From positions 1 through 64,000 of the IMG/VR virus record IMGVR_UViG_3300024999_000029: a DNA stretch of 64,000 bases, one strand, 5' to 3'. Position numbers and translations under genes: made by a program. This document shows, piece by piece, positions 18,804-46,651 of this stretch (position 1 is the stretch's first letter; every line of letters begins with the position of its first letter). Under the pieces are notes generated by a model. It was not told the origin of the DNA, searched no databases, and saw only the letters and a program-made list of their open reading frames with translations.

Positions 18804-19601
18804 TTATTGAAATATTGATTTTTGTAAGCCTACTCCTGCAAGGGTTTCACTTTTCACAATTATTTCTAGTATGCGATTTTGAGCAATTTTATAGTAATTT
18901 TCATCTAATTCAAACCCTATGTAATTTCTGCTTGTATTTAAGGCGGCAATAGCAGTTGTTCCTGAACCTATACAATTATCTAAAACCGTTTCACCTTTGT
19001 TTGTGTAGGTGTTAATTAGCCATTCGCACAACTCTACTGGCTTTTGAGTAGGGTGCAAAGATATTGATGGATGAGGTTTTGAAAACTCTAATATAGATGT
19101 CGGGAATTTCATATCTCCTTTAGTTTCAACACATTTGAAATCTCCATAATTATTATTTTGCAAAACAGCATCATTCATCTTGCCCACAACACTACCTTTT
19201 TTATGACACGGATTACCTTTAATCTTTTGTGGATTATATATTGGTTGTTTTTTATAAAATACCATTATGTCCTCATGTTCCCTTAATGGCTGTTTATTAG
19301 CGTTTAAAAATCCACTTGATAAAACTTTCTTCCATATCAAATTATATCTATGTATTTTTTTGTTTGACAACATTGTCTCTGCAGTAAATTTATCTTGACC
19401 AAATAAAACTATTGCTCCATTATCTTTAATAATCCTTTCATACTGCTCCCATAGTAGTTGATAAGAAATTATTGTATCCCACTTGTTTTTTGTAGTTACT
19501 CCATAAGGTAAGTCACAAAGAATCATATCTATTGATTTATCGTCTATAAGTTTCATACCTTCTAAACAATCTTGTTTATATATCTTGTTTAACTTAATCA
19601 T
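18804..19601 (-). CDS. Orphan beta-class N6A/N4C DNA methyltransferase
   Basis: DCLEGM, ILCDLPYG (motif IV) before HPTQKPVEL and DNCIGSGTT (motif I); no adjacent restriction endonuclease. Confidence 0.9.
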   Translation of the reverse strand: MIKLNKIYKQDCLEGMKLIDDKSIDMILCDLPYGVTTKNKWDTIISYQLLWEQYERIIKDNGAIVLFGQDKFTAETMLSNKKIHRYNLIWKKVLSSGFLNANKQPLREHEDIMVFYKKQPIYNPQKIKGNPCHKKGSVVGKMNDAVLQNNNYGDFKCVETKGDMKFPTSILEFSKPHPSISLHPTQKPVELCEWLINTYTNKGETVLDNCIGSGTTAIAALNTSRNYIGFELDENYYKIAQNRILEIIVKSETLAGVGLQKSIFQ

Positions 19602-19796: not shown

Positions 19797-20340
19797 TTCT
19801 TTCTCCTTTCTATAAAAATCCGATTTCATTGAGATTTCTAATTTTCAAACCTTACTCCCACAAGGGTTTCAAATTCGGTAGTAATTTTAATTTTCACAAT
19901 TTCATACAAATATGCTACATCTATATTATTTCTATAATCCAATGCGTCTTCATAATTATTATAAAAATATGCTTTATTTATATTTGTTGTTGGACAGCCA
20001 TACTCATTTAGATATTCATTTTCGCCAATATATTTAATAGCATATTTTACTTCTTCTGATTTTTCTTTCATTATTTTCTCCTTCGTTTAGCAGGTTACTT
20101 TTGTAGTATAAGCATTTAGGTCATTTGGCGTTTTATAATAAATGTTGTCTTGGTATGGGAATGTCGGATAATTTGGGTAACTTAGATAAAATGGGTATAT
20201 GACATTTTTATTATCTTCAAATTCCTCTGTTGTCGTTGTTTCTCTTATTAATTTCCCTTCGTTATCATATTCTTTAATGTTGGTTACTTTTTTCATAGCT
20301 TCCTCCTTTTATATTTAATTTAAACGAAAGTCTTATTTTA

Positions 20341-20748
20341 TTAACCGTTTCTACCTGCACCATATCCTGAATCAATATCTGCAAATCCATTATCCACATT
20401 TACAGCATTTATGGCTTCAATTATTCCATCAGAAAAATCACTATAATCAACATCATAATCAGGTTCACCATCTGACTCATCAATATCATCACCATCACCA
20501 AAAAATATAAAATCAGAATCAATATTTTCTTTAACATAATTTTCTGATGGCGTAAGATCCACTCCTGCCCAATCATATTCAAATAATCTACTACTTTTTA
20601 TCTCTGATAAAAGCTCTTCTCCTGTATATGTGTCATATCCATATTTATCTATTATTGGTTGTGCCTTTTCTTTATCTTTGACCCTTGCAAATACAGCTAT
20701 AAAACTACTAGAGCTTGAATTTGTTACAAAATCTGTGCGTATTTTCAT
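20341..20748 (-). CDS. TNSSS-motif protein 4
   Basis: Starts MKIRTDFVTNSSSSSF; ATGA overlap with upstream gene. Confidence 0.8.
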   Translation of the reverse strand: MKIRTDFVTNSSSSSFIAVFARVKDKEKAQPIIDKYGYDTYTGEELLSEIKSSRLFEYDWAGVDLTPSENYVKENIDSDFIFFGDGDDIDESDGEPDYDVDYSDFSDGIIEAINAVNVDNGFADIDSGYGAGRNG

Positions 20749-21203
20749 ATGTTTGTTCTCCTTTTATATTTCATAAATTTATGCCAATTAGTAAATTTAC
20801 TTCTTATTTCATCCATGATTTTATCTTCACTTAAATCAAATTTGTTAAAAACATATTGTATATATTCGCTATCATATAACTTCCTTCTGCGCTTGTTAGC
20901 CTTTTTAACTTCCGCAAACACTTCATCTCTTGTGATTTCTCTGGTTTTTAATAAATAGTCTGCCATTTCGCTTTGAGAATACATTGTAAAATTACAAATT
21001 GGACAACTTTCTTCTGCTATAAAATAACTATCTTCTTCATCATTTTTATAATTTTCCAGCAAATGCTCTTCGCAAAACGAGTGTTCGTTTACACATCTTC
21101 TTAACCACTCTGGAAAATCCCATGTTGTTTCTTCATCTCCGCATATTTCACAAATATAACTCGAACTACTGGAATTTGTAACAAAATCTTTTCTGAATTT
21201 CAT
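20745..21203 (-). CDS. TNSSS-motif protein 3, with Cys/His motifs
   Basis: Starts MKFRKDFVTNSSSSSY, then CEIC, C..EH..C, CPIC. Confidence 0.8.
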   Translation of the reverse strand: MKFRKDFVTNSSSSSYICEICGDEETTWDFPEWLRRCVNEHSFCEEHLLENYKNDEEDSYFIAEESCPICNFTMYSQSEMADYLLKTREITRDEVFAEVKKANKRRRKLYDSEYIQYVFNKFDLSEDKIMDEIRSKFTNWHKFMKYKRRTNI

Positions 21204-21634
21204 TATTCGTCCTCCAAAATTATAAAATTCTCTTTATCTTCGGCAAGTTCATGTATCATATTTGAACAATATGTATCATTATGATCTACGCTTTTCCTTA
21301 AAATTGTAAACCCATCTTCGATATATTTGCTTGCATTATTATATAGTTTTGATAAATACTCATCGTCTTTTATTATTTTTTCAACTGTGTCGCAGTTTCT
21401 CCATCCATAATAATCAATAAAGTACTTATTCCACTCTTCTTTTGTTGAAATTTTTTCTCCTGCTGTTGTATCATTATCTCCCTCTGTAAACAAAACCTTT
21501 TCAATCAATCTTGAATAATTATTCAAAAACGGATATTTTTTAATTGTTTCTTCATCAATTTGTGGTAATTCTTTATACGCAACCACGAAACTACTTGAAC
21601 TACTATTAGTCACGAAATCACTTCTTATTTTCAT
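21203..21634 (-). CDS. TNSSS-motif protein 2
   Basis: Starts MKIRSDFVTNSSSSSF. Confidence 0.8.
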   Translation of the reverse strand: MKIRSDFVTNSSSSSFVVAYKELPQIDEETIKKYPFLNNYSRLIEKVLFTEGDNDTTAGEKISTKEEWNKYFIDYYGWRNCDTVEKIIKDDEYLSKLYNNASKYIEDGFTILRKSVDHNDTYCSNMIHELAEDKENFIILEDE

Positions 21635-21636
21635 AG

Positions 21637-22026
21637 TTACCTCCTCTGATCACAATAACCGAAAGTATATGGTATTTTATATTTATTTTCAAAAACATCT
21701 TCAACTAAAGACCAATTAAATCTACAACAAGTATTATTATCAATTACATAAAATTGTTGTTCTTCTGGAAGATTTGTGTCTCCATAATTATCTTTATTAA
21801 TTTCTTTGCCTGTTTTTACAAACAATGAACAGCCAATATCTTCATTGTTTAATATCCTTGAAATATTAAAATCCTCATCAATCTCTTCTTTGGTAAGCCA
21901 ATCATATGTTTTGTAATAAAAATCTTTAAATGCTCCATTAAATAAATCTTCTAAACTAATATTTTTAGCGGATATAATAAAACTACTTGATGATGAATTA
22001 GTTACAAAATCCTGCCTAATCTTCAT
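21637..22026 (-). CDS. TNSSS-motif protein 1 (true start probably ATG 22026)
   Basis: GAGGAG RBS precedes ATG at 22026, giving MKIRQDFVTNSSSSSF like its paralogues. Confidence 0.8.
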   Translation of the reverse strand: MKIRQDFVTNSSSSSFIISAKNISLEDLFNGAFKDFYYKTYDWLTKEEIDEDFNISRILNNEDIGCSLFVKTGKEINKDNYGDTNLPEEQQFYVIDNNTCCRFNWSLVEDVFENKYKIPYTFGYCDQRR

Positions 22027-22726
22027 ATAACCCTTTCTCCTCTCTATCACTAAATTTAAATGTCCACCCTTTATGTTGTTTTCTTTTACCTTTTAAACAA
22101 TCAGATACATTAGAATTAATTAAGTCATTTTGCCTACAAAATTCTCTAACATTTGTAAATGTAAAACTTTCATTACTTGGAGATATGGCGATTATTTCTT
22201 TTAATTTATTGGTAAAATTACAATTTATATAGTTTGTAACCCATATACATGTATCTTTACTATAAACTTTGTTATTACTACCCATTTGTTTGATATCTTT
22301 ATCTAGTTGTAATAGATGTTCATTAAAGAGTTTTTCATTATATTCTTCTATTTGTTTTATATCTTTAATAAAATTCTCAAAACATAACCACTCTTGACAA
22401 ACAGTTACTCCTTTTTCGCCATATCTTTCATAAGTTGGATGGATTTTATTGTAACATCTTGTAAGCATTGATTTCCAAATAGAATATTCATGAGGATAAT
22501 CTTTTTTATTATGACATCCTAGATAACCCACTCCTACTACTGTGGGATAATTTTTATCAACAATATGCCCTTTATTTATTTGAGTAGAATTTGCATACGC
22601 TTTATATTTTGTTTTTATAAATTCTACTTCATAAATAAGATTCCTGTTTTTATCTTTATCTATTATTTGTAACACAATAAATTCTCCACTTCTATTGCTT
22701 GAATATACTTTTCCAACTTCAACCAT
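22016..22726 (-). CDS. Free-standing HNH-like homing endonuclease with NUMOD1-like tail
   Basis: YSIWKSMLTRCY, YERYGEKGVTVCQEWLCFENF, QLDKDI, YSKDTCIWV..N, CLKGKRKQHKGWTF. Confidence 0.8.
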   Translation of the reverse strand: MVEVGKVYSSNRSGEFIVLQIIDKDKNRNLIYEVEFIKTKYKAYANSTQINKGHIVDKNYPTVVGVGYLGCHNKKDYPHEYSIWKSMLTRCYNKIHPTYERYGEKGVTVCQEWLCFENFIKDIKQIEEYNEKLFNEHLLQLDKDIKQMGSNNKVYSKDTCIWVTNYINCNFTNKLKEIIAISPSNESFTFTNVREFCRQNDLINSNVSDCLKGKRKQHKGWTFKFSDREEKGLYED

Positions 22727-23804
22727 TATAAAAATTCCTCTCTATTCTATTACATAATGTAATCTCATTTACAAATGGGCATCCTCCACCACAACTATTT
22801 CTATCTACACATTTTTTGCATGAATATCTCAAACTATTTCTAAATCCTTCAAAAATACCGCTATTCCATGCTTCTTTAATCGTATATTTATTTAAGTCTA
22901 CAAGCCATTTGCTATCTTGATTACCAAAAGAACAAGGCATCATATTCATTTGTGCATCTATGTAGGCTGAATATCTCGCTCCTTCACAAAAATCCATGCT
23001 ATCCCTATTAATTTTTTCTGTGAAATTAATAATTCCACTACAAGAGCAGCTATCAAAACCAATTTTAAAGTCTACATTATTATCATCTATGAGTCTAAAA
23101 AATTCTTTTACTCGCTCATCTCCTACTTTTAATACATTTTCTTGACTTCCTAGCCCAACAGGCTTATGCATTAGGAATATAACTGCATTAATGCCTTTGT
23201 CAAAACTATTATTTCTTAATTTATTTATTGCTTCGTTTATTGTATTACTTCCTAGCACATAATGAATATTGACCTTCATCCCAGAATCTATAAACATTTT
23301 GATTGCTTTTCTTGTGTACTCACTACGATATTCACTTACAGCCACAGCCCCACAATATTGTTTAGTGATTCTTACTTCTTCATCAGTTAACCCCAATCCA
23401 GAAGTAGTATAATTAGGAATAATATTATTTTCTCTGCAATATTTTACGAACTCTTCAAATTGTTCATGCTTATTAACATCTCCTCTACCACCGAGAGCCA
23501 CCTGAAATGAATGTCCTTTTAATTGGTTAATGATAGTTTTGAAATTTTCTAATGTCATATTGGGTTTTTGAATATGTAATCCATCTTGATAGCACTCAAT
23601 ACCACTTTTAACACACAATCCTGATAATCCATGTATACACGTTGACATGATTCCAATATCCACTAATTCAGGCAGATAGCTCATAAAAGGATCAATTCCA
23701 GTATCCTCACCTTTTTCATTTATGACACCAGACCTCATATAGAATCCAGTTTTCGGATTAAACATTGATATAAATTTATTTTTCTTATCAATTTTTTTAA
23801 TCAT
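22719..23804 (-). CDS. Radical SAM protein with SPASM domain
   Basis: C-x7-C-x6-C-YQ cluster motif, VALGGRGD, TTSG, C-terminal CEGA...PCSF...CKKC-x5-CGGGCP. Confidence 0.85.
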   Translation of the reverse strand: MIKKIDKKNKFISMFNPKTGFYMRSGVINEKGEDTGIDPFMSYLPELVDIGIMSTCIHGLSGLCVKSGIECYQDGLHIQKPNMTLENFKTIINQLKGHSFQVALGGRGDVNKHEQFEEFVKYCRENNIIPNYTTSGLGLTDEEVRITKQYCGAVAVSEYRSEYTRKAIKMFIDSGMKVNIHYVLGSNTINEAINKLRNNSFDKGINAVIFLMHKPVGLGSQENVLKVGDERVKEFFRLIDDNNVDFKIGFDSCSCSGIINFTEKINRDSMDFCEGARYSAYIDAQMNMMPCSFGNQDSKWLVDLNKYTIKEAWNSGIFEGFRNSLRYSCKKCVDRNSCGGGCPFVNEITLCNRIERNFYNG

Positions 23805-24080
23805 TTATATCTCCTCTTTTTTATATTTTTGATAAAAAGCACATTTGATTTAATTTAATTAGTATATTCATAATGAGAAACATCACAATATCCATGTATT
23901 AGTATTTCATTAAAACTCTTATCTGCATTTTCTGGCGTGATCATATGTGCGGTATATACTCCATTACTTGTTGTAAATAATAATAATTTGCTTCCTTTGG
24001 GATGCGTAACTTTTATACAAGAATAAATTTGTTCGTTAAACTTAACTCTCATATCCTCTCCTTTCTATCAAATACATGTT

Positions 24081-27562: not shown

Positions 27563-27720
27563 TCGATGGATTTATGTATACTGTGAACTACCACCACCTT
27601 AGAGGTGGATGGCTTCCTGCTCAATAATGCTAATGCACTAAGTATCAACAGGCTATCCCCGTAATCCCTACGGGTTTTTATATATTTACGCTACTAAACT
27701 TAATATCCTAATTCCTTCTT
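27563..27720 (-). ncRNA. TnpB omegaRNA/reRNA scaffold plus guide (approximate limits)
   Basis: Hairpin CCCGTA-GGGAT-TACGGG, right-end hairpin, TTCAC boundary; guide inferred as AGTATACATAAATCCATCGA. Confidence 0.65.
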
Positions 27721-28804
27721 CTCGTATATTCTTAGCTGCATTGTAATCTCTGTCTATAATAATCCCACATGATTTACATATCCACTCTCTATCAGATAAT
27801 TGCAATTCGTGATTTATTTCTCCGCAATCATTGCATGTTTTGCTAGAAGGATACCATTTATCAACCTTAACTAAATATTTACCTTCGTTCTCTAATTTAT
27901 ATTTAAGCATTGTGGTGAACATGCCCCATCCATTATCTGCAACACTCTTACCTAAATTCAAACACTGACTCATTGCTCTCATATTCAAATCTTCAATTAC
28001 AATTACATTATACTGATTAACTAATTCTCTTGATTTCTTATGAAGAAAATCTTTCCTACAATTAGCAACCTTTTCATGTAACTTAGCAACTTTAATTCTT
28101 TGTTTATTTCGGTTATTACTTCCTTTTTGCATTTTAGATAATTTGCGTTGTTCTTTTGCTAGTTGTTCTAATGTTTGACGATAGAATATTGGATATTCTG
28201 CCCTTATACCTTGATTGTCAGTATAAAGATTCTTCATATCCATATCTAATCCTATAACATTGTTTTTCTCTTTAGGTTGAACATACTGCTCAAATTCAAC
28301 TAATATACTTATATAATATTTTCCAGAAGGTGTTTTAGATATTGAACAAGACTTAATTTCTTGATTACTTGGAATTTCTCTATGTTGTACAATGTTGACC
28401 CAGCCAAGTTTAGGTAGTTTGACTTTCTTATTTTTAATTCTGATGTTTCCACCTTGATTATTTGTAGTATAAGAGTTTCTATCTTTATGCTTACTTTTGA
28501 ATTTAGGAAAGCCAACATTTTTGCATCTAAAGAAATTGACGTATGCTGTTTGTAAATTCATTTGGGCATTAGCTAGAGCCAAACTATCCACTTCTTTAAG
28601 CCATTCAAATTCTGCCTTATATTTAGCAGGAGTAGGATTCTTGTGTTTTTTTAATTCTTCTTTATTATCTTTATATTGTTCATATATATCTTTACGCTCT
28701 GCTAACATTTTATTATATACAAATCTAACACATCCAAAAGTTTTGCTAAATAATATTTCTTGTTCTTCATTAGGATATAGCCTAAATTTATAAGCTTTGT
28801 TCAT
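27686..28804 (-). CDS. tnpB: TnpB RNA-guided endonuclease
   Basis: MNKAYKFRLYP HTH start; RuvC residues IGLD, VIED, DRDYNAA intact; CNDC/CKSC Zn ribbon. Confidence 0.95.
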   Translation of the reverse strand: MNKAYKFRLYPNEEQEILFSKTFGCVRFVYNKMLAERKDIYEQYKDNKEELKKHKNPTPAKYKAEFEWLKEVDSLALANAQMNLQTAYVNFFRCKNVGFPKFKSKHKDRNSYTTNNQGGNIRIKNKKVKLPKLGWVNIVQHREIPSNQEIKSCSISKTPSGKYYISILVEFEQYVQPKEKNNVIGLDMDMKNLYTDNQGIRAEYPIFYRQTLEQLAKEQRKLSKMQKGSNNRNKQRIKVAKLHEKVANCRKDFLHKKSRELVNQYNVIVIEDLNMRAMSQCLNLGKSVADNGWGMFTTMLKYKLENEGKYLVKVDKWYPSSKTCNDCGEINHELQLSDREWICKSCGIIIDRDYNAAKNIREEGIRILSLVA

Positions 28805-45427: not shown

Positions 45428-46651
45428 TTAAACTACCGTAATACCCTTAAACATTGATAAATTGCCAGTAATCTTTTCGCCAACCCTTAAAAACAACCCC
45501 GATGGCTCATTATTAATTAAAAACGAACCAATTAATAATTTTCCTTTGTAAACTCCGTCCCAAGTATTAATTTCTTCATCTGGCATTTCTATATATTGCT
45601 GATATATTTTCTTTTGATTATAGTAATAAGATGTATCATCTTCTATCAATTCGCCATCATTGATAATTGACACTCCTCCTCCCTCTCTGCCAAAAATAGG
45701 TTTTGAAACATAGCCATCATTGAATTTATCCGAAGTAAAGTATGTTGGTAAGAAATGTCTTTTAATAATAATTAATTCTTCTTTCGAGAATACCGAATTT
45801 TTGCTTTCATACAATTCCCATATAATTGCCATAATAGCTTTAGATTGCATAATAAAAGCCGATGGAGGATTGATAATTTTAATATTACCATTAATTATAT
45901 GATCAATAAACATTTGTCCTATCTTTTTACCATTTTCATTTTCATCGACATCATCACAAAGATACTCAATTGGATATAAACGATATAAGTAGTTTATTCT
46001 TCGCCCGTCTGGCGTAAAAATACCATCTTCAGCAACATATAATTCATCTAATGGTATGTATTCAGTGATATGGTCACAATATTTTTGTATAAACTGTGTT
46101 GTTCTTTTATCTTCTTCGTGCCATCCATAAGAGGTAAAAAATATAGTCTCATATTTTGGAATGTCATACTCTTTAATTATTTGTTCCCATGATTTTTGAA
46201 TATTTTTTTCAAGATTATTAAAAGATTCATACCCATTTTCTGCACAAATCATTTTATTGCATATAGAAGTTTCTAAATATCCAGTTGGAGTATCACAATT
46301 GACCTCAATAACTTTTATTTGATTATCTTTTACTATTAAATCCATTCTTGTGAAGTAACTAAATAATTTGCTATATATTTTACTTAATTCCATTGTTCCT
46401 ATGGGTAATCCTAATTTCTGAAGGTATTTAAAATTATTAAATACGTATTCGTATGTTTTTTGATAGATATTACCGATATCTTTTGTTGCTTGATTAATAT
46501 TATCCCATAATTCCTTATTCATTTTATAAACATCAAAAGACATATATTGATTCCACTCATCATTTTCTAAAAGACTTCCCCAAGTAAAACCGTTTAAAAT
46601 CATTTTATCATTTATTTCTAGCCATTTTTTTAAATACTCATTATTGTTCAT
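45428..46651 (-). CDS. Glutathionylspermidine-synthase-family ATP-grasp ligase (YgiC/YjfC-like)
   Basis: RMD, KVIEVNCDTPTG, EDKRTT, LYRLYPIE, IMQSKA, YVSKPIFGREG, YQQY, LLIGSF, GLFLR. Confidence 0.9.
   Translation of the reverse strand: MNNNEYLKKWLEINDKMILNGFTWGSLLENDEWNQYMSFDVYKMNKELWDNINQATKDIGNIYQKTYEYVFNNFKYLQKLGLPIGTMELSKIYSKLFSYFTRMDLIVKDNQIKVIEVNCDTPTGYLETSICNKMICAENGYESFNNLEKNIQKSWEQIIKEYDIPKYETIFFTSYGWHEEDKRTTQFIQKYCDHITEYIPLDELYVAEDGIFTPDGRRINYLYRLYPIEYLCDDVDENENGKKIGQMFIDHIINGNIKIINPPSAFIMQSKAIMAIIWELYESKNSVFSKEELIIIKRHFLPTYFTSDKFNDGYVSKPIFGREGGGVSIINDGELIEDDTSYYYNQKKIYQQYIEMPDEEINTWDGVYKGKLLIGSFLINNEPSGLFLRVGEKITGNLSMFKGITVV

What the first reader, a model, noticed from the sequence alone, without database searches (positions are those of the whole stretch)
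20341..23804. Radical SAM/SPASM enzyme coupled to four unrelated proteins sharing an N-terminal DFVTNSSSSS motif
Seen: four tandem, tightly packed genes start MKIRQDFVTNSSSSSF, MKIRSDFVTNSSSSSF, MKFRKDFVTNSSSSSY and MKIRTDFVTNSSSSSF, then diverge completely. Ser codons differ between copies (TCA/AGT/TCC/AGC), so the motif is conserved as protein and is not a recent DNA duplication. They follow a radical SAM/SPASM gene in one operon that lacks internal 7-6-7 sites but is bracketed by them (20323, 23831). Known: SPASM enzymes modify peptide or protein substrates (RiPP crosslinks, Ser/Cys to formylglycine). Inference: the 16-aa motif is a recognition tag or modification site on 130-150 aa cargo proteins, or an autoprocessing/assembly motif. 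This would be a phage-encoded protein-modification system.
Basis: partly seen in the sequence, partly recalled or inferred. Interest (0 to 1): 0.85.

Follow-up and report, generated by a model that had tools for sequence, protein, structure and literature searches.

The report
Radical-SAM enzyme with N-terminally tagged proteins
A huge groundwater phage carries a divergent radical SAM/SPASM enzyme followed by four unrelated small proteins that share a 16-residue N-terminal tag, and this enzyme-plus-tag pairing proves to be a very widespread, unannotated module in phages and in bacterial defence-like loci, most likely a one-enzyme, many-substrates protein modification system.

Summary
Four adjacent minus-strand genes (20341-22026) start MK[IF]RxDFVTNSSSSS[FY] and then diverge. 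They lie downstream of a 361-aa radical SAM/SPASM-like gene (22719-23804).

- An HNH homing-endonuclease gene (22016-22726) sits between the enzyme and the tag genes.
- The enzyme's cluster loop is Cx7Cx6C, not CxxxCxxC.
- A promoter-like AAATATAAAA core also occurs inside the operon.

- 62 of 115 viral stretches and about 90 of 120 genome stretches found through the tag hold the enzyme. Most of the rest are cut at the edge.
- 75 of 80 viral loci found through the enzyme hold 1-8 tag genes downstream on the same strand. The other five end too early.

A profile of the tag hits 17,563 protein clusters. Cargo is heterogeneous, and long cellular versions carry LRR, TIR or BRCT-like domains. A cellular operon joins an Avs2-like STAND NTPase, a tag protein and a canonical CxxxCxxC version of the enzyme.

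AlphaFold leaves tag residues 1-10 disordered ahead of beta1.

Best reading: the tail is the docking and modification site of the maturase. The chemistry is untested. No Pfam, NCBIfam, PADLOC or literature record was found.

The parts
22719..23804 (-). Divergent radical SAM/SPASM maturase, 361 aa. Its cluster loop is C56-x7-C64-x6-C71-Y, the GGE-equivalent motif is LGGRGD, and the full 7-Cys SPASM motif is present (C253, C273, C291, C329, C332, C338, C342, plus C351).
   Evidence: phrog_7293, E=4.6e-25. Alignment A6. Cellular orthologs have the canonical Cx3Cx2C and score 56.5 bits on Pfam Radical_SAM. A PDB profile search hits PqqE, anSME and BtrN in the SPASM part only.
22016..22726 (-). Free-standing HNH / I-HmuI-NUMOD-like homing endonuclease, 236 aa, inserted between the maturase and the tag genes. 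Not part of the system.
   Evidence: Among 115 viral loci it is present only in the two loci identical to the window, one 71%-identical relative and one distant relative. In most other loci the first tag gene starts 14-40 nt after the maturase.
21637..22026 (-). Tag protein A, 129 aa from the ATG at 22026, cargo cluster 10. The mechanical ORF extends to a GTG at 22050.
21203..21634 (-). Tag protein B, 143 aa, cargo cluster 1. It has an alpha/beta fold with no PDB match, and residues 1-10 are disordered.
   Evidence: more than 200 orthologs; pLDDT 87.
20745..21203 (-). Tag protein C, 152 aa, cargo cluster 0. Its cargo is a Zn-ribbon/RING-like domain with CxxC pairs and a basic C-terminus.
   Evidence: (zf-RING_5, E=1.7e-4, below the cut-off).
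20341..20748 (-). Tag protein D, 135 aa, cargo cluster 3. It has a ferredoxin-like alpha/beta fold and a conserved C-terminal NGFA...GAGRNG. Residues 1-11 are disordered.
   Evidence: (pLDDT 83).
21587..21634 (-). Example of the 16-codon tag (MKIRSDFVTNSSSSSF). The equivalent segments are 21979-22026 (A), 21156-21203 (C) and 20701-20748 (D).
23819..23828 (-). Promoter-like AAATATAAAA element upstream of the maturase RBS. Further copies lie at 21675-21684, 20762-20771 (before D) and 20307-20316 (after D).

Best explanation
This is a one-enzyme, many-substrates protein maturation module.

**Proposed mechanism**
- The radical SAM/SPASM enzyme binds the free, disordered N-terminal tail M-K-[IVF]-R-x-[DG]-F-V-T-N of each co-encoded protein. 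Binding is probably by beta-strand pairing, given the alternating basic and hydrophobic pattern.
- It then uses a 5'-deoxyadenosyl radical to modify the invariant T-N-S-S-S-S-S stretch that leads into the first beta strand of the cargo.
- Candidate chemistries are Ser C-beta oxidation to an aldehyde (as in anSME), C-alpha epimerisation, or a cross-link to F7 or F16.
- The tag is therefore a portable handle that lets unrelated domains receive the same modification.

**Distribution**
- In phages the handle sits on arrays of 2-8 small proteins in accessory regions.
- In cells it sits on single proteins, some carrying TIR or LRR domains, or beside an Avs2-like STAND NTPase.
- The module therefore most likely serves phage-host conflict functions.

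**Shown here**
- The tag, its selection at protein level, its position at residue 1, its predicted disorder, the heterogeneity of the cargo, the near-obligate same-strand adjacency to the enzyme, and the enzyme's rSAM/SPASM nature.

**Inferred**
- That the enzyme acts on the tag, which residues are modified, what the chemistry is, and what the biological role is.
For: **Linkage starting from the tag**
- 62 of 115 IMG/VR stretches hold a 47-62% identical maturase. In 60 of the 62 it is upstream of the tag genes on the same strand.
- Stretches without the enzyme are mostly cut at the upstream edge.
- About 90 of 120 genome stretches hold the enzyme within 8 kb. The tag gene lies directly upstream (340-410 nt) or directly downstream (14-38 nt).

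**Linkage starting from the enzyme**
- 75 of 80 viral loci hold 1-8 tag genes: 292 downstream on the same strand, 1 upstream, 0 on the opposite strand.
- The 5 loci without tag genes have less than 3.2 kb of downstream sequence.

**Selection at protein level**
- 316 tags that encode DFVTNSSSSS are written by 303 different 30-nt strings.
- All six Ser codons are used at every Ser position.

**Structure**
- In both B and D, residues 1-10/11 have pLDDT below 50 and beta1 starts within the Ser run.

**Cargo heterogeneity**
- blastp gives 39 cargo clusters.
- Only 1 of 120 pairs of cargo-cluster profiles is related in hhalign.
- Long cellular cargo carries LRR_5, TIR or BRCT-like domains.

**Enzyme**
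- The SPASM cysteines are conserved.
- Cellular orthologs have the canonical CxxxCxxC, score 56.5 bits on Pfam Radical_SAM, and match SuiB at E=1.4e-11.
- The best NCBIfam partial hits are peptide maturases (MftC, WgkB, PqqE), all far below their cut-offs.

**Concerted change**
- In one phage clade all three unrelated paralogs have G6 instead of D6.
Against: - No biochemical evidence exists for any modification.
- The window enzyme lacks the canonical CxxxCxxC. The x6 spacing before the third Cys is unusual, and the Glu of the GGE motif is replaced, so catalytic competence is assumed rather than shown.
- There is no RRE domain. Only about 50 residues precede the cluster loop.
- A 28%-identical enzyme clade in Slopekvirus phages has no tag genes nearby, so not every member of the wider family uses this substrate.
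- Part of the Ser run is predicted to lie in beta1, so access may require action before the cargo folds.
- The D/G co-variation is essentially one lineage, and a few mixed loci exist.
Confidence: 0.6

Rival explanations
1. Adaptor model. The tag is a docking handle, but the tagged proteins are not the substrates. Each variable domain binds a different host or phage target and brings it to the radical SAM enzyme, in the way F-box proteins serve one ligase. Alternatively, the tagged proteins regulate the enzyme.
For: It rests on the same synteny. The cargo includes classic binding modules, LRR_5 and BRCT-like. Tag residues 1-10 are disordered and look like a linear docking motif.
Against: Radical SAM/SPASM active sites are buried and accept extended peptides, so a folded third-party protein is a poor substrate. 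All characterised relatives found here (SuiB, MftC, PqqE, anSME) modify the co-encoded or tagged polypeptide itself. The invariant five-Ser run is hard to explain as docking alone.
Confidence: 0.15
2. Targeting or assembly signal. The tag directs the proteins to a common destination, such as packaging into the capsid for injection (like the capsid-targeting sequence of the T4 internal proteins), export, or co-assembly through a polar zipper. On this reading the neighbouring radical SAM enzyme has an unrelated or only indirect role.
For: The pattern of a conserved N-terminal tag of about 10-16 residues plus variable cargo, in tandem arrays in phage genomes, matches the T4 internal-protein pattern as I know it. 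The tag is disordered in the monomer models.
Against: The tag also occurs as single genes in cellular, non-phage operons beside a STAND NTPase and next to housekeeping genes. It is almost never found without the enzyme. The window operon lies in the replication module, not the structural one. The tag has no Glu, so the T4-type L/I-x-E protease site is absent.
Confidence: 0.08
3. Structural or catalytic motif. DFVTNSSSSSF is the first strand and a phosphate- or ligand-binding loop of one fast-evolving fold. On this reading the proteins are divergent homologs that work with the radical SAM enzyme in a small-molecule pathway.
For: The Ser run and F-[IV]-[IV] start beta1 in both models, and both cargos are small alpha/beta domains. 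Natural fusions carry a second, internal copy of the core motif at a domain start.
Against: Profile-profile comparison finds no homology between cargo clusters once the tag is removed. The cargo ranges from Zn-ribbons to LRR and TIR domains. Residues 1-10, including the invariant K2, R4, D6 and F7, are outside the fold. Neither model has a PDB fold match at E<=0.001.
Confidence: 0.07
4. Nucleic-acid-level signal. The conserved 5' ends are a shared translational or regulatory RNA element, or the product of recent gene conversion.
For: The conserved stretch lies at the translation start of tightly coupled genes.
Against: 303 different 30-nt strings encode the same 10 residues, and all six Ser codons, both TCN and AGY, occur at each Ser position. 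The four window copies differ at synonymous sites.
Confidence: 0.02

Closest known systems
Radical SAM/SPASM RiPP maturases with multiple precursors (SuiB/StrB streptide cyclase, PDB 5V1Q; WgkB; MftC; PqqE)
   Same: The enzyme has an rSAM barrel plus a 7-Cys SPASM domain. Its substrates are co-encoded on the same strand and share a conserved recognition sequence ahead of variable remainders. One enzyme serves several substrates. SuiB is the best solved-structure hit for a cellular ortholog (E=1.4e-11).
   Different: No RRE domain is present. The partners are 90-780-aa folded proteins, not short peptides, and the conserved part is the first 16 residues. No protease or exporter is linked. The phage versions have Cx7Cx6C or CxCx3Cx3C loops. 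All NCBIfam maturase models score far below their cut-offs.
Anaerobic sulfatase-maturating enzymes (anSME, PDB 4K36-4K39)
   Same: These are rSAM/SPASM enzymes without an RRE that act on whole proteins near the N-terminus and can oxidise a Ser C-beta. Here they give a SPASM-region hit (E=1e-3).
   Different: The tags have no C/S-x-P/A-x-R target motif. Similarity is confined to the SPASM part, and the cargo proteins are not sulfatases.
CrpC/CrpA protein thioether system of methanogens (PMC13692751)
   Same: It is a SPASM rSAM enzyme shown to modify a co-encoded protein rather than a short peptide.
   Different: According to the section headings of that paper (I did not read the sections), CrpC has a predicted RRE. 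It installs Cys thioethers on a Cys-rich protein, whereas the tag here has no Cys and a Ser run. No sequence comparison was made.
T4 internal proteins with a capsid-targeting sequence (from my own knowledge)
   Same: Both show a short conserved N-terminal sequence on otherwise unrelated small proteins, in tandem arrays in phage accessory regions.
   Different: The T4 proteins have no linked enzyme, and their sequence is removed by the prohead protease. The tag here is also found in cellular operons and is tied to an rSAM enzyme.
rSAM-SPASM peptide-processing modules in NTP-dependent conflict systems (Kaur et al. 2020, PMC7159879)
   Same: An rSAM-SPASM enzyme is predicted to modify a co-encoded polypeptide inside STAND/AP-ATPase-type conflict systems.
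   Different: Those systems use C-terminal FxSxx peptides released by a peptidase within vWA-MoxR ternary systems. Here the tag is N-terminal, differs in sequence, and has no vWA-MoxR partners.
Avs2 (AVAST type 2) STAND NTPases
   Same: In the cellular operons, the 880-aa neighbour of the tag protein and enzyme matches the Avs2 NTPase region (PADLOC E=9e-32; NCBIfam 73 bits).
   Different: The NCBIfam score is far below the Avs2 cut-off of 1000, and the protein is shorter. No such gene is present in the window.

Membership tests
Radical SAM superfamily | CxxxCxxC (or an accepted variant) three-Cys loop that binds the [4Fe-4S] cluster | tested here: inconclusive
   The window protein has C-x7-C-x6-C-Y, so the canonical motif is absent. 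All three Cys are conserved across the family. 116 unique homologs share Cx7Cx6C, and 11 cellular orthologs have the canonical Cx3Cx2C at the same place.
Radical SAM superfamily | Significant match to Pfam PF04055 Radical_SAM | tested here: inconclusive
   The window protein gives no hit. Its cellular orthologs L177 and L139 score 56.5 and 37.9 bits against a cut-off of 29.5, and they align with the window protein's family profile at 240-290 bits.
Radical SAM superfamily | Reductive cleavage of SAM to the 5'-deoxyadenosyl radical | not testable with these tools
   This needs anaerobic reconstitution and a 5'-dA assay.
SPASM subfamily | C-terminal 7-Cys motif for two auxiliary [4Fe-4S] clusters | tested here: met
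   PF13186 scores 21.6 bits (cut-off 21.5) and TIGR04085 27.2 (cut-off 27). In the 27-sequence alignment C253, C273, C291, C329, C332 and C338 are invariant, and C342 and C351 are nearly so.
RiPP-type rSAM maturase system | Co-encoded substrate genes sharing a conserved recognition sequence | tested here: met
   Same-strand adjacency was found in 60/62, about 90/120 and 75/80 loci.
RiPP-type rSAM maturase system | RiPP recognition element (PqqD-like wHTH) in the enzyme or as a partner | tested here: not met
   Only about 50 residues precede the cluster loop. No Pfam or NCBIfam RRE/PqqD hit was found in the enzyme, and the window operon holds nothing but the enzyme, the HNH gene and the four tag genes.
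RiPP-type rSAM maturase system | Short precursor peptide with a leader and a core, released as a peptide product | tested here: not met
   The partners are 90-780 aa. Two were modelled as folded domains with pLDDT 83-87. No protease or transporter is linked.
Anaerobic sulfatase-maturating enzyme | Substrate motif C/S-x-P/A-x-R and sulfatase cargo | tested here: not met
   The tag consensus has no such motif. Similarity to anSME is limited to SPASM at E=1e-3.
T4-type capsid-targeting sequence proteins | N-terminal targeting peptide ending in a prohead-protease site (L/I-x-E), confined to phages | tested here: not met
   Positions 1-16 of 413 tags contain no Glu. The tag occurs in cellular operons. 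The definition of the feature is from my own knowledge.
Known anti-phage defence systems (PADLOC v2) | Match of the enzyme or tag protein to a PADLOC model | tested here: not met
   The window enzyme and tag protein B give no hit. The cellular ortholog gives only a generic pVip rSAM-core hit (E=2e-11). The neighbouring NTPase hits Avs2.

The most novel reading that the evidence does not exclude
The tag and maturase form a previously undescribed, very widespread post-translational 'handle' system of anaerobes and their phages. A non-canonical radical SAM/SPASM enzyme converts an N-terminal Asn-Ser5 tail into a modified group, either reactive or cross-linked. That group is required for the activity, stability or delivery of many unrelated conflict proteins: TIR and LRR proteins, partners of STAND NTPases, and phage accessory arrays. 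The module would then be used by both defence and counter-defence.
Probability: 0.35. Interest if true: 0.9.

Novelty: new variant of a known kind. Interest (0 to 1): 0.8.

Why it matters
If the enzyme does modify the tag, this would be a new radical SAM protein modification with several notable properties:
- It has a portable 16-residue recognition sequence.
- It acts on whole folded proteins rather than peptides.
- It uses an unusual Cx7Cx6C cluster loop.
- Its scale is very large: a profile of the tag alone hits 17,563 protein clusters at 50% identity.

Practical and conceptual consequences:
- It would assign a shared biochemical step to thousands of 'hypothetical' phage genes.
- It would link them to cellular STAND, TIR and LRR loci, and so point to an unrecognised layer of phage-host conflict in anaerobes.
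- It might give protein engineers a short enzymatic tagging sequence.
- The experiment is directly tractable: co-expression and mass spectrometry of one tryptic peptide.

Tried and rejected
- **Pfam, NCBIfam and PADLOC on the four tag proteins.** No family was found. Only phrog_7397 (unknown function) matched, over the first 19-45 residues.
- **blastn and tblastn against GenBank phages.** Nothing turned up for the tag proteins beyond one chance-level hit. The HNH gene hit Staphylococcus phages.
- **Slopekvirus lead.** The enzyme's 28%-identical homologs in KP15-like phages have no tag genes nearby.
- **ESM Atlas.** Only unnamed viral clusters were returned.
- **Foldseek of the B and D models against the PDB.** No match at E<=0.001. 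The best hits were generic ferredoxin-like, NDK or PII folds with TM 0.2-0.4.
- **Homology between cargo clusters (hhalign).** Rejected except for one pair.
- **RNA- or DNA-level conservation.** Rejected on the codon data.
- **TAAATTAAAT as the bracketing site.** Not enriched: 6 copies against 4.2 expected.
- **Sigma-70 promoter and terminator scan of the operon.** Nothing above shuffle expectation.
- **Literature searches** for the motif string, for phage rSAM/SPASM, for STAND plus rSAM and for RiPPs in phages found no description. The eLife 2020 conflict-systems paper describes a different rSAM-SPASM peptide module.
- **D6/G6 co-variation with the enzyme clade.** It comes from essentially one lineage, so I give it little weight.
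- **Not done.** No structure was predicted for the enzyme or for an enzyme-tag complex, because both prediction jobs went to cargo proteins.

Full report
**1. What is in the window**

All genes in 17.5-27 kb lie on the minus strand. In transcription order the operon is:
- a 361-aa radical SAM/SPASM-like protein, 22719-23804;
- a 236-aa HNH/I-HmuI-like homing endonuclease, 22016-22726, overlapping the enzyme by 8 nt and tag gene A by 11 nt;
- tag gene A, 21637-22026;
- tag gene B, 21203-21634;
- tag gene C, 20745-21203;
- tag gene D, 20341-20748.

The tag genes are separated by a 2-nt gap, a 1-nt overlap and a 4-nt overlap. A six-frame regular-expression scan finds the motif only at these four starts in the 64 kb.

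The four proteins share M1, K2, R4, D6-S15 and then diverge, at 20-29% overall identity.

The window is part of IMG/VR contig 3300024999_000029 (349,050 bp). The same sequence occurs in a groundwater metagenome. Its large genes are replication and recombination functions: DNA polymerase, helicases, exonucleases, NAD ligase and Sak4-like. A DNA methyltransferase sits just downstream. The operon therefore lies in a non-structural region of a huge phage.

**2.

Among 115 related viral loci it appears only in the two loci identical to the window, one 71%-identical relative and one distant relative. It is a mobile insertion, not part of the system.
- The enzyme has a clear SPASM signature, only just above the cut-offs. 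It has no Pfam Radical_SAM hit and no CxxxCxxC. Its loop reads C-x7-C-x6-C-Y.
- I could not reconstruct the '7-6-7' site. The element common to both cited positions is AAATATAAAA, which occurs 47 times in the window against 5.2 expected, with 44 copies on the coding strand. It usually sits 5-20 nt before a ribosome-binding site. Copies also lie before gene D and 40 nt before gene B, so the operon is not free of internal copies of this core.

**3. The tag is a huge family**

There are typically 2-7 tandem copies per stretch.

The same pattern found at least 120 stretches in species-representative genomes. These come mostly from anaerobes: Clostridia, Erysipelotrichaceae, Coriobacteriia, Sporomusa, Desulfobacterota and methanogens. 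Arenibacter is also represented.

A 32-column profile of the N-terminus was searched against 1.84 billion cluster representatives. It gave 17,563 hits at E<=0.001. Among the best 150, the match almost always starts at residue 1. The low-scoring tail may include some Ser-rich false positives, and I could not inspect it.

Over 413 distinct tag-coding starts the residue frequencies are as follows:

| Position | Residue frequency |
|---|---|
| 2 | K 99% |
| 4 | R 99% |
| 6 | D 91% / G 7% |
| 7 | F 95% |
| 8 | V 98% |
| 9 | T 99% |
| 10 | N 100% |
| 11-13 | S 99-100% |
| 14 | S 91% / T 7% |
| 15 | S 98% |
| 16 | F 82% / Y 17% |

Position 5 is free. Positions 7-15 were partly fixed by the retrieval patterns in all loci. 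K2 and R4 were fixed in the pattern-derived loci but not in the enzyme-anchored ones.

316 tags encoding DFVTNSSSSS are written by 303 different 30-nt strings, and all six Ser codons occur at each position. Selection therefore acts on the protein.

**4. The cargo is truly heterogeneous**

237 unique viral tag proteins fall into 39 blastp clusters once the first 21 residues are removed. Profile-profile comparison of the 16 largest clusters finds one related pair out of 120.

The window's four proteins belong to recurrent clusters:
- C: cluster 0, Zn-ribbon-like;
- B: cluster 1;
- D: cluster 3;
- A: cluster 10.

They are therefore orthologs of proteins found in many other phages, not window-specific inventions.

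In cellular genomes the tag also heads long proteins:
- 22 with BspA-type LRR_5 repeats (up to 777 aa);
- one 743-aa TIR protein;
- a BRCT-like protein.

Natural fusions of two tag proteins exist, with the second tag internal at the start of the second domain.

**5. Linkage to the enzyme**

*Starting from the tag.* 62 of 115 viral stretches contain a 47-62% identical homolog of the window enzyme. In 60 of the 62 every tag gene is on the same strand and downstream, and the first often starts 14 nt after the enzyme. Stretches without the enzyme are mostly those where the stored DNA ends just upstream of the array.

In genome stretches of 8 kb or less, about 90 of 120 contain the enzyme. The tag gene lies immediately upstream (340-410 nt, that is one gene of 124-140 aa) or immediately downstream (14-38 nt).

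*Starting from the enzyme.* 80 viral loci were retrieved with 6-kb flanks. My first count seemed to show 31 loci without tags. Inspection showed these carry a G6 variant, MK[IL]RxGFVTNSSSSSF.

With a regular expression that leaves position 6 free, 75 of 80 loci have 1-8 tag genes: 292 downstream on the same strand, 1 upstream, 0 on the opposite strand. The five remaining loci have less than 3.2 kb of downstream sequence. Linkage is thus close to obligate in both directions.

A more distant enzyme clade, 28% identical with a Cx7Cx2C loop, occurs in Slopekvirus and other T4-like phages and has no tag genes nearby.

**6. The enzyme**

An alignment of 27 homologs shows:
- three conserved Cys in a variable loop;
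- an LGG[RA]GD motif where rSAM enzymes have GGE;
- a conserved CGAVAVS strand;
- a complete SPASM cysteine set.

Loop types across unique homologs:

| Loop | Unique homologs | Where |
|---|---|---|
| Cx7Cx6C | 116 | viral and cellular |
| CxCx3Cx3C | 18 | almost all viral |
| Cx3Cx2C (canonical) | 11 | cellular only |

The canonical members score 56.5 bits on Pfam Radical_SAM plus SPASM. They match the streptide cyclase SuiB at E=1.4e-11 over residues 56-342.

Their best NCBIfam partial hits are peptide or cofactor maturases (MftC, WgkB, NirJ2, PqqE), all far below the curated cut-offs. The family is therefore an unmodelled branch of the rSAM/SPASM maturases.

Only about 50 residues precede the cluster loop, so there is no room for an RRE domain.

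**7. Structure of the tag proteins**

AlphaFold2 with family alignments gives confident models for B (pLDDT 87) and D (pLDDT 83). In both, residues 1-10/11 have pLDDT below 50, and the first strand begins inside the Ser run and continues through F-[IV]-[IV]. Neither cargo matches a solved structure at E<=0.001.

The tag therefore has two parts:
- a free tail, M-K-phi-R-x-D-F-V-T-N, with the alternating pattern of a strand that could pair with a partner;
- the Ser run, which joins the tail to the cargo.

A free terminal tail is what a buried radical SAM active site would need in order to reach a folded protein substrate.

**8. Cellular context**

A conserved operon recurs in Arenibacter troitsensis, Sporomusa sp. 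KB1, a Verrucomicrobiia MAG, Methanoculleus and several Clostridia. It contains:
- a STAND NTPase (880 aa in Arenibacter) matching Avs2 (PADLOC E=9e-32; NCBIfam Avs2 73 bits, far below the cut-off);
- a small protein of 131-172 aa;
- a tag protein of about 140 aa;
- the canonical-motif enzyme;
- in some loci, a 322-aa protein with an M1E1E6-like domain.

In Sporomusa a PRTase-CE/PRTase_III-A-type protein follows. In an Acutalibacteraceae MAG the enzyme and the tag-TIR protein sit beside a ThsA-Macro protein, a NUDIX protein and a TPR protein. Another locus is flanked by housekeeping genes.

These contexts show the module is not restricted to phages. They suggest, but do not prove, a role in conflict systems. 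Many 'genome' hits are MAG contigs that may be prophages or mis-binned phage DNA.

**9. Interpretation**

The best-supported model is a one-enzyme, many-substrates maturation system in which the tail is the docking and modification site. The reasons are:
- obligate adjacency;
- one enzyme per array;
- extreme protein-level conservation of 14 of 15 tag positions across enzymes that are only 50-60% identical;
- a free N-terminal tail;
- an enzyme family whose known relatives modify co-encoded polypeptides.

I cannot tell which chemistry occurs. An invariant Asn-Ser5 segment with no Cys points away from thioethers. It is compatible with Ser C-beta oxidation as in anSME, with epimerisation, or with a cross-link to F7 or F16.

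In one phage clade all three paralogs have G6 (24 loci; 3 other loci are mixed). This fits a shared partner, but it is a single lineage.

The rivals are scored separately in the report: adaptor model, targeting signal, shared structural motif and nucleic-acid signal. The nucleic-acid signal is effectively excluded by the codon data. The targeting-signal model is weakened by the cellular operons and by the near-absence of tags without the enzyme.

**10. Novelty**

- Neither the tag proteins nor the enzyme match any Pfam, NCBIfam or PADLOC family specific to them.
- Both PHROGs are 'unknown function'.
- The ESM Atlas returns only unnamed viral clusters.
- Five full-text searches found no description.

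The closest published concepts are rSAM-SPASM modification of a whole protein in methanogens (PMC13692751) and rSAM-SPASM peptide modules in conflict systems (PMC7159879). Both differ in tag, partners and architecture.

I class this as a new variant of a known kind: an rSAM/SPASM maturase with co-encoded substrates. Its unusual features are protein substrates, an N-terminal portable tag, a non-canonical cluster loop and very wide distribution.

**Limits**
- There is no biochemical evidence.
- Stored loci are uneven in length.
- The motif positions used for retrieval inflate apparent conservation.
- I did not model the enzyme or a complex.

Noticed in passing
window, 47 sites, e.g. 23819-23828, 21675-21684, 20762-20771, 20307-20316 (all minus strand): AAATATAAAA occurs 47 times against 5.2 expected. 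44 copies are on the coding strand, usually 5-20 nt upstream of an RBS and start codon. It looks like this phage's promoter core, reminiscent of T4 late promoters.
   Followed up: partly
window 22016-22726 (-): A free-standing HNH/I-HmuI-NUMOD homing endonuclease is inserted between the maturase and the first tag gene and overlaps both. Its nearest DNA relatives are homing endonucleases of Staphylococcus phages.
   Followed up: partly
window 22719-23804 (-); L240-L319, L120-L239: The radical SAM cluster loop is non-canonical across most of the family: Cx7Cx6C in 116 unique homologs and CxCx3Cx3C in 18. Only 11 cellular, STAND-linked orthologs keep Cx3Cx2C.
   Followed up: partly
L001 (Klebsiella phage KP15, gene KP15_135) and 172 other T4-like phage records: A 28%-identical rSAM/SPASM homolog with a Cx7Cx2C loop is conserved in Slopekvirus and related phages, with no tag genes nearby. 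Its substrate is unknown.
   Followed up: partly
L177 1266-5796; L139 1-4281; also L153, L131, L129, L176, L178, L182: A conserved cellular operon contains an Avs2-like STAND NTPase, a small protein, a tag protein of about 140 aa and a canonical rSAM/SPASM enzyme, sometimes with an M1E1E6-like protein. It is spread across Bacteroidota, Verrucomicrobiota, Bacillota and methanogens and is a candidate defence system.
   Followed up: partly
L199 95-7986: The maturase and a 743-aa tag-TIR protein sit next to a ThsA-Macro domain protein, a NUDIX hydrolase and a 901-aa TPR protein, a Thoeris-like neighbourhood.
   Followed up: no
L027 4457-8332: An adenylosuccinate-synthetase-like (PurA/PurZ-like, by eye) gene lies directly upstream of the maturase. 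A LemA-like protein (by eye) and a membrane protein are inserted between the maturase and the tag array.
   Followed up: no
P0121, P0122, P0125, P0189: There are natural fusions of two tag proteins in one ORF, with the second tag internal at the start of the second domain. Variant tags GFVTN and GFVSN also occur.
   Followed up: no
window 27686-28804 (-); 45428-46651 (-); 18804-19601 (-): A transposase (phrog_506, E=3e-131), a glutathionylspermidine-synthase-like gene (phrog_6215) and an N6/N4 DNA methyltransferase lie in the same replication-module region of the phage.
   Followed up: no
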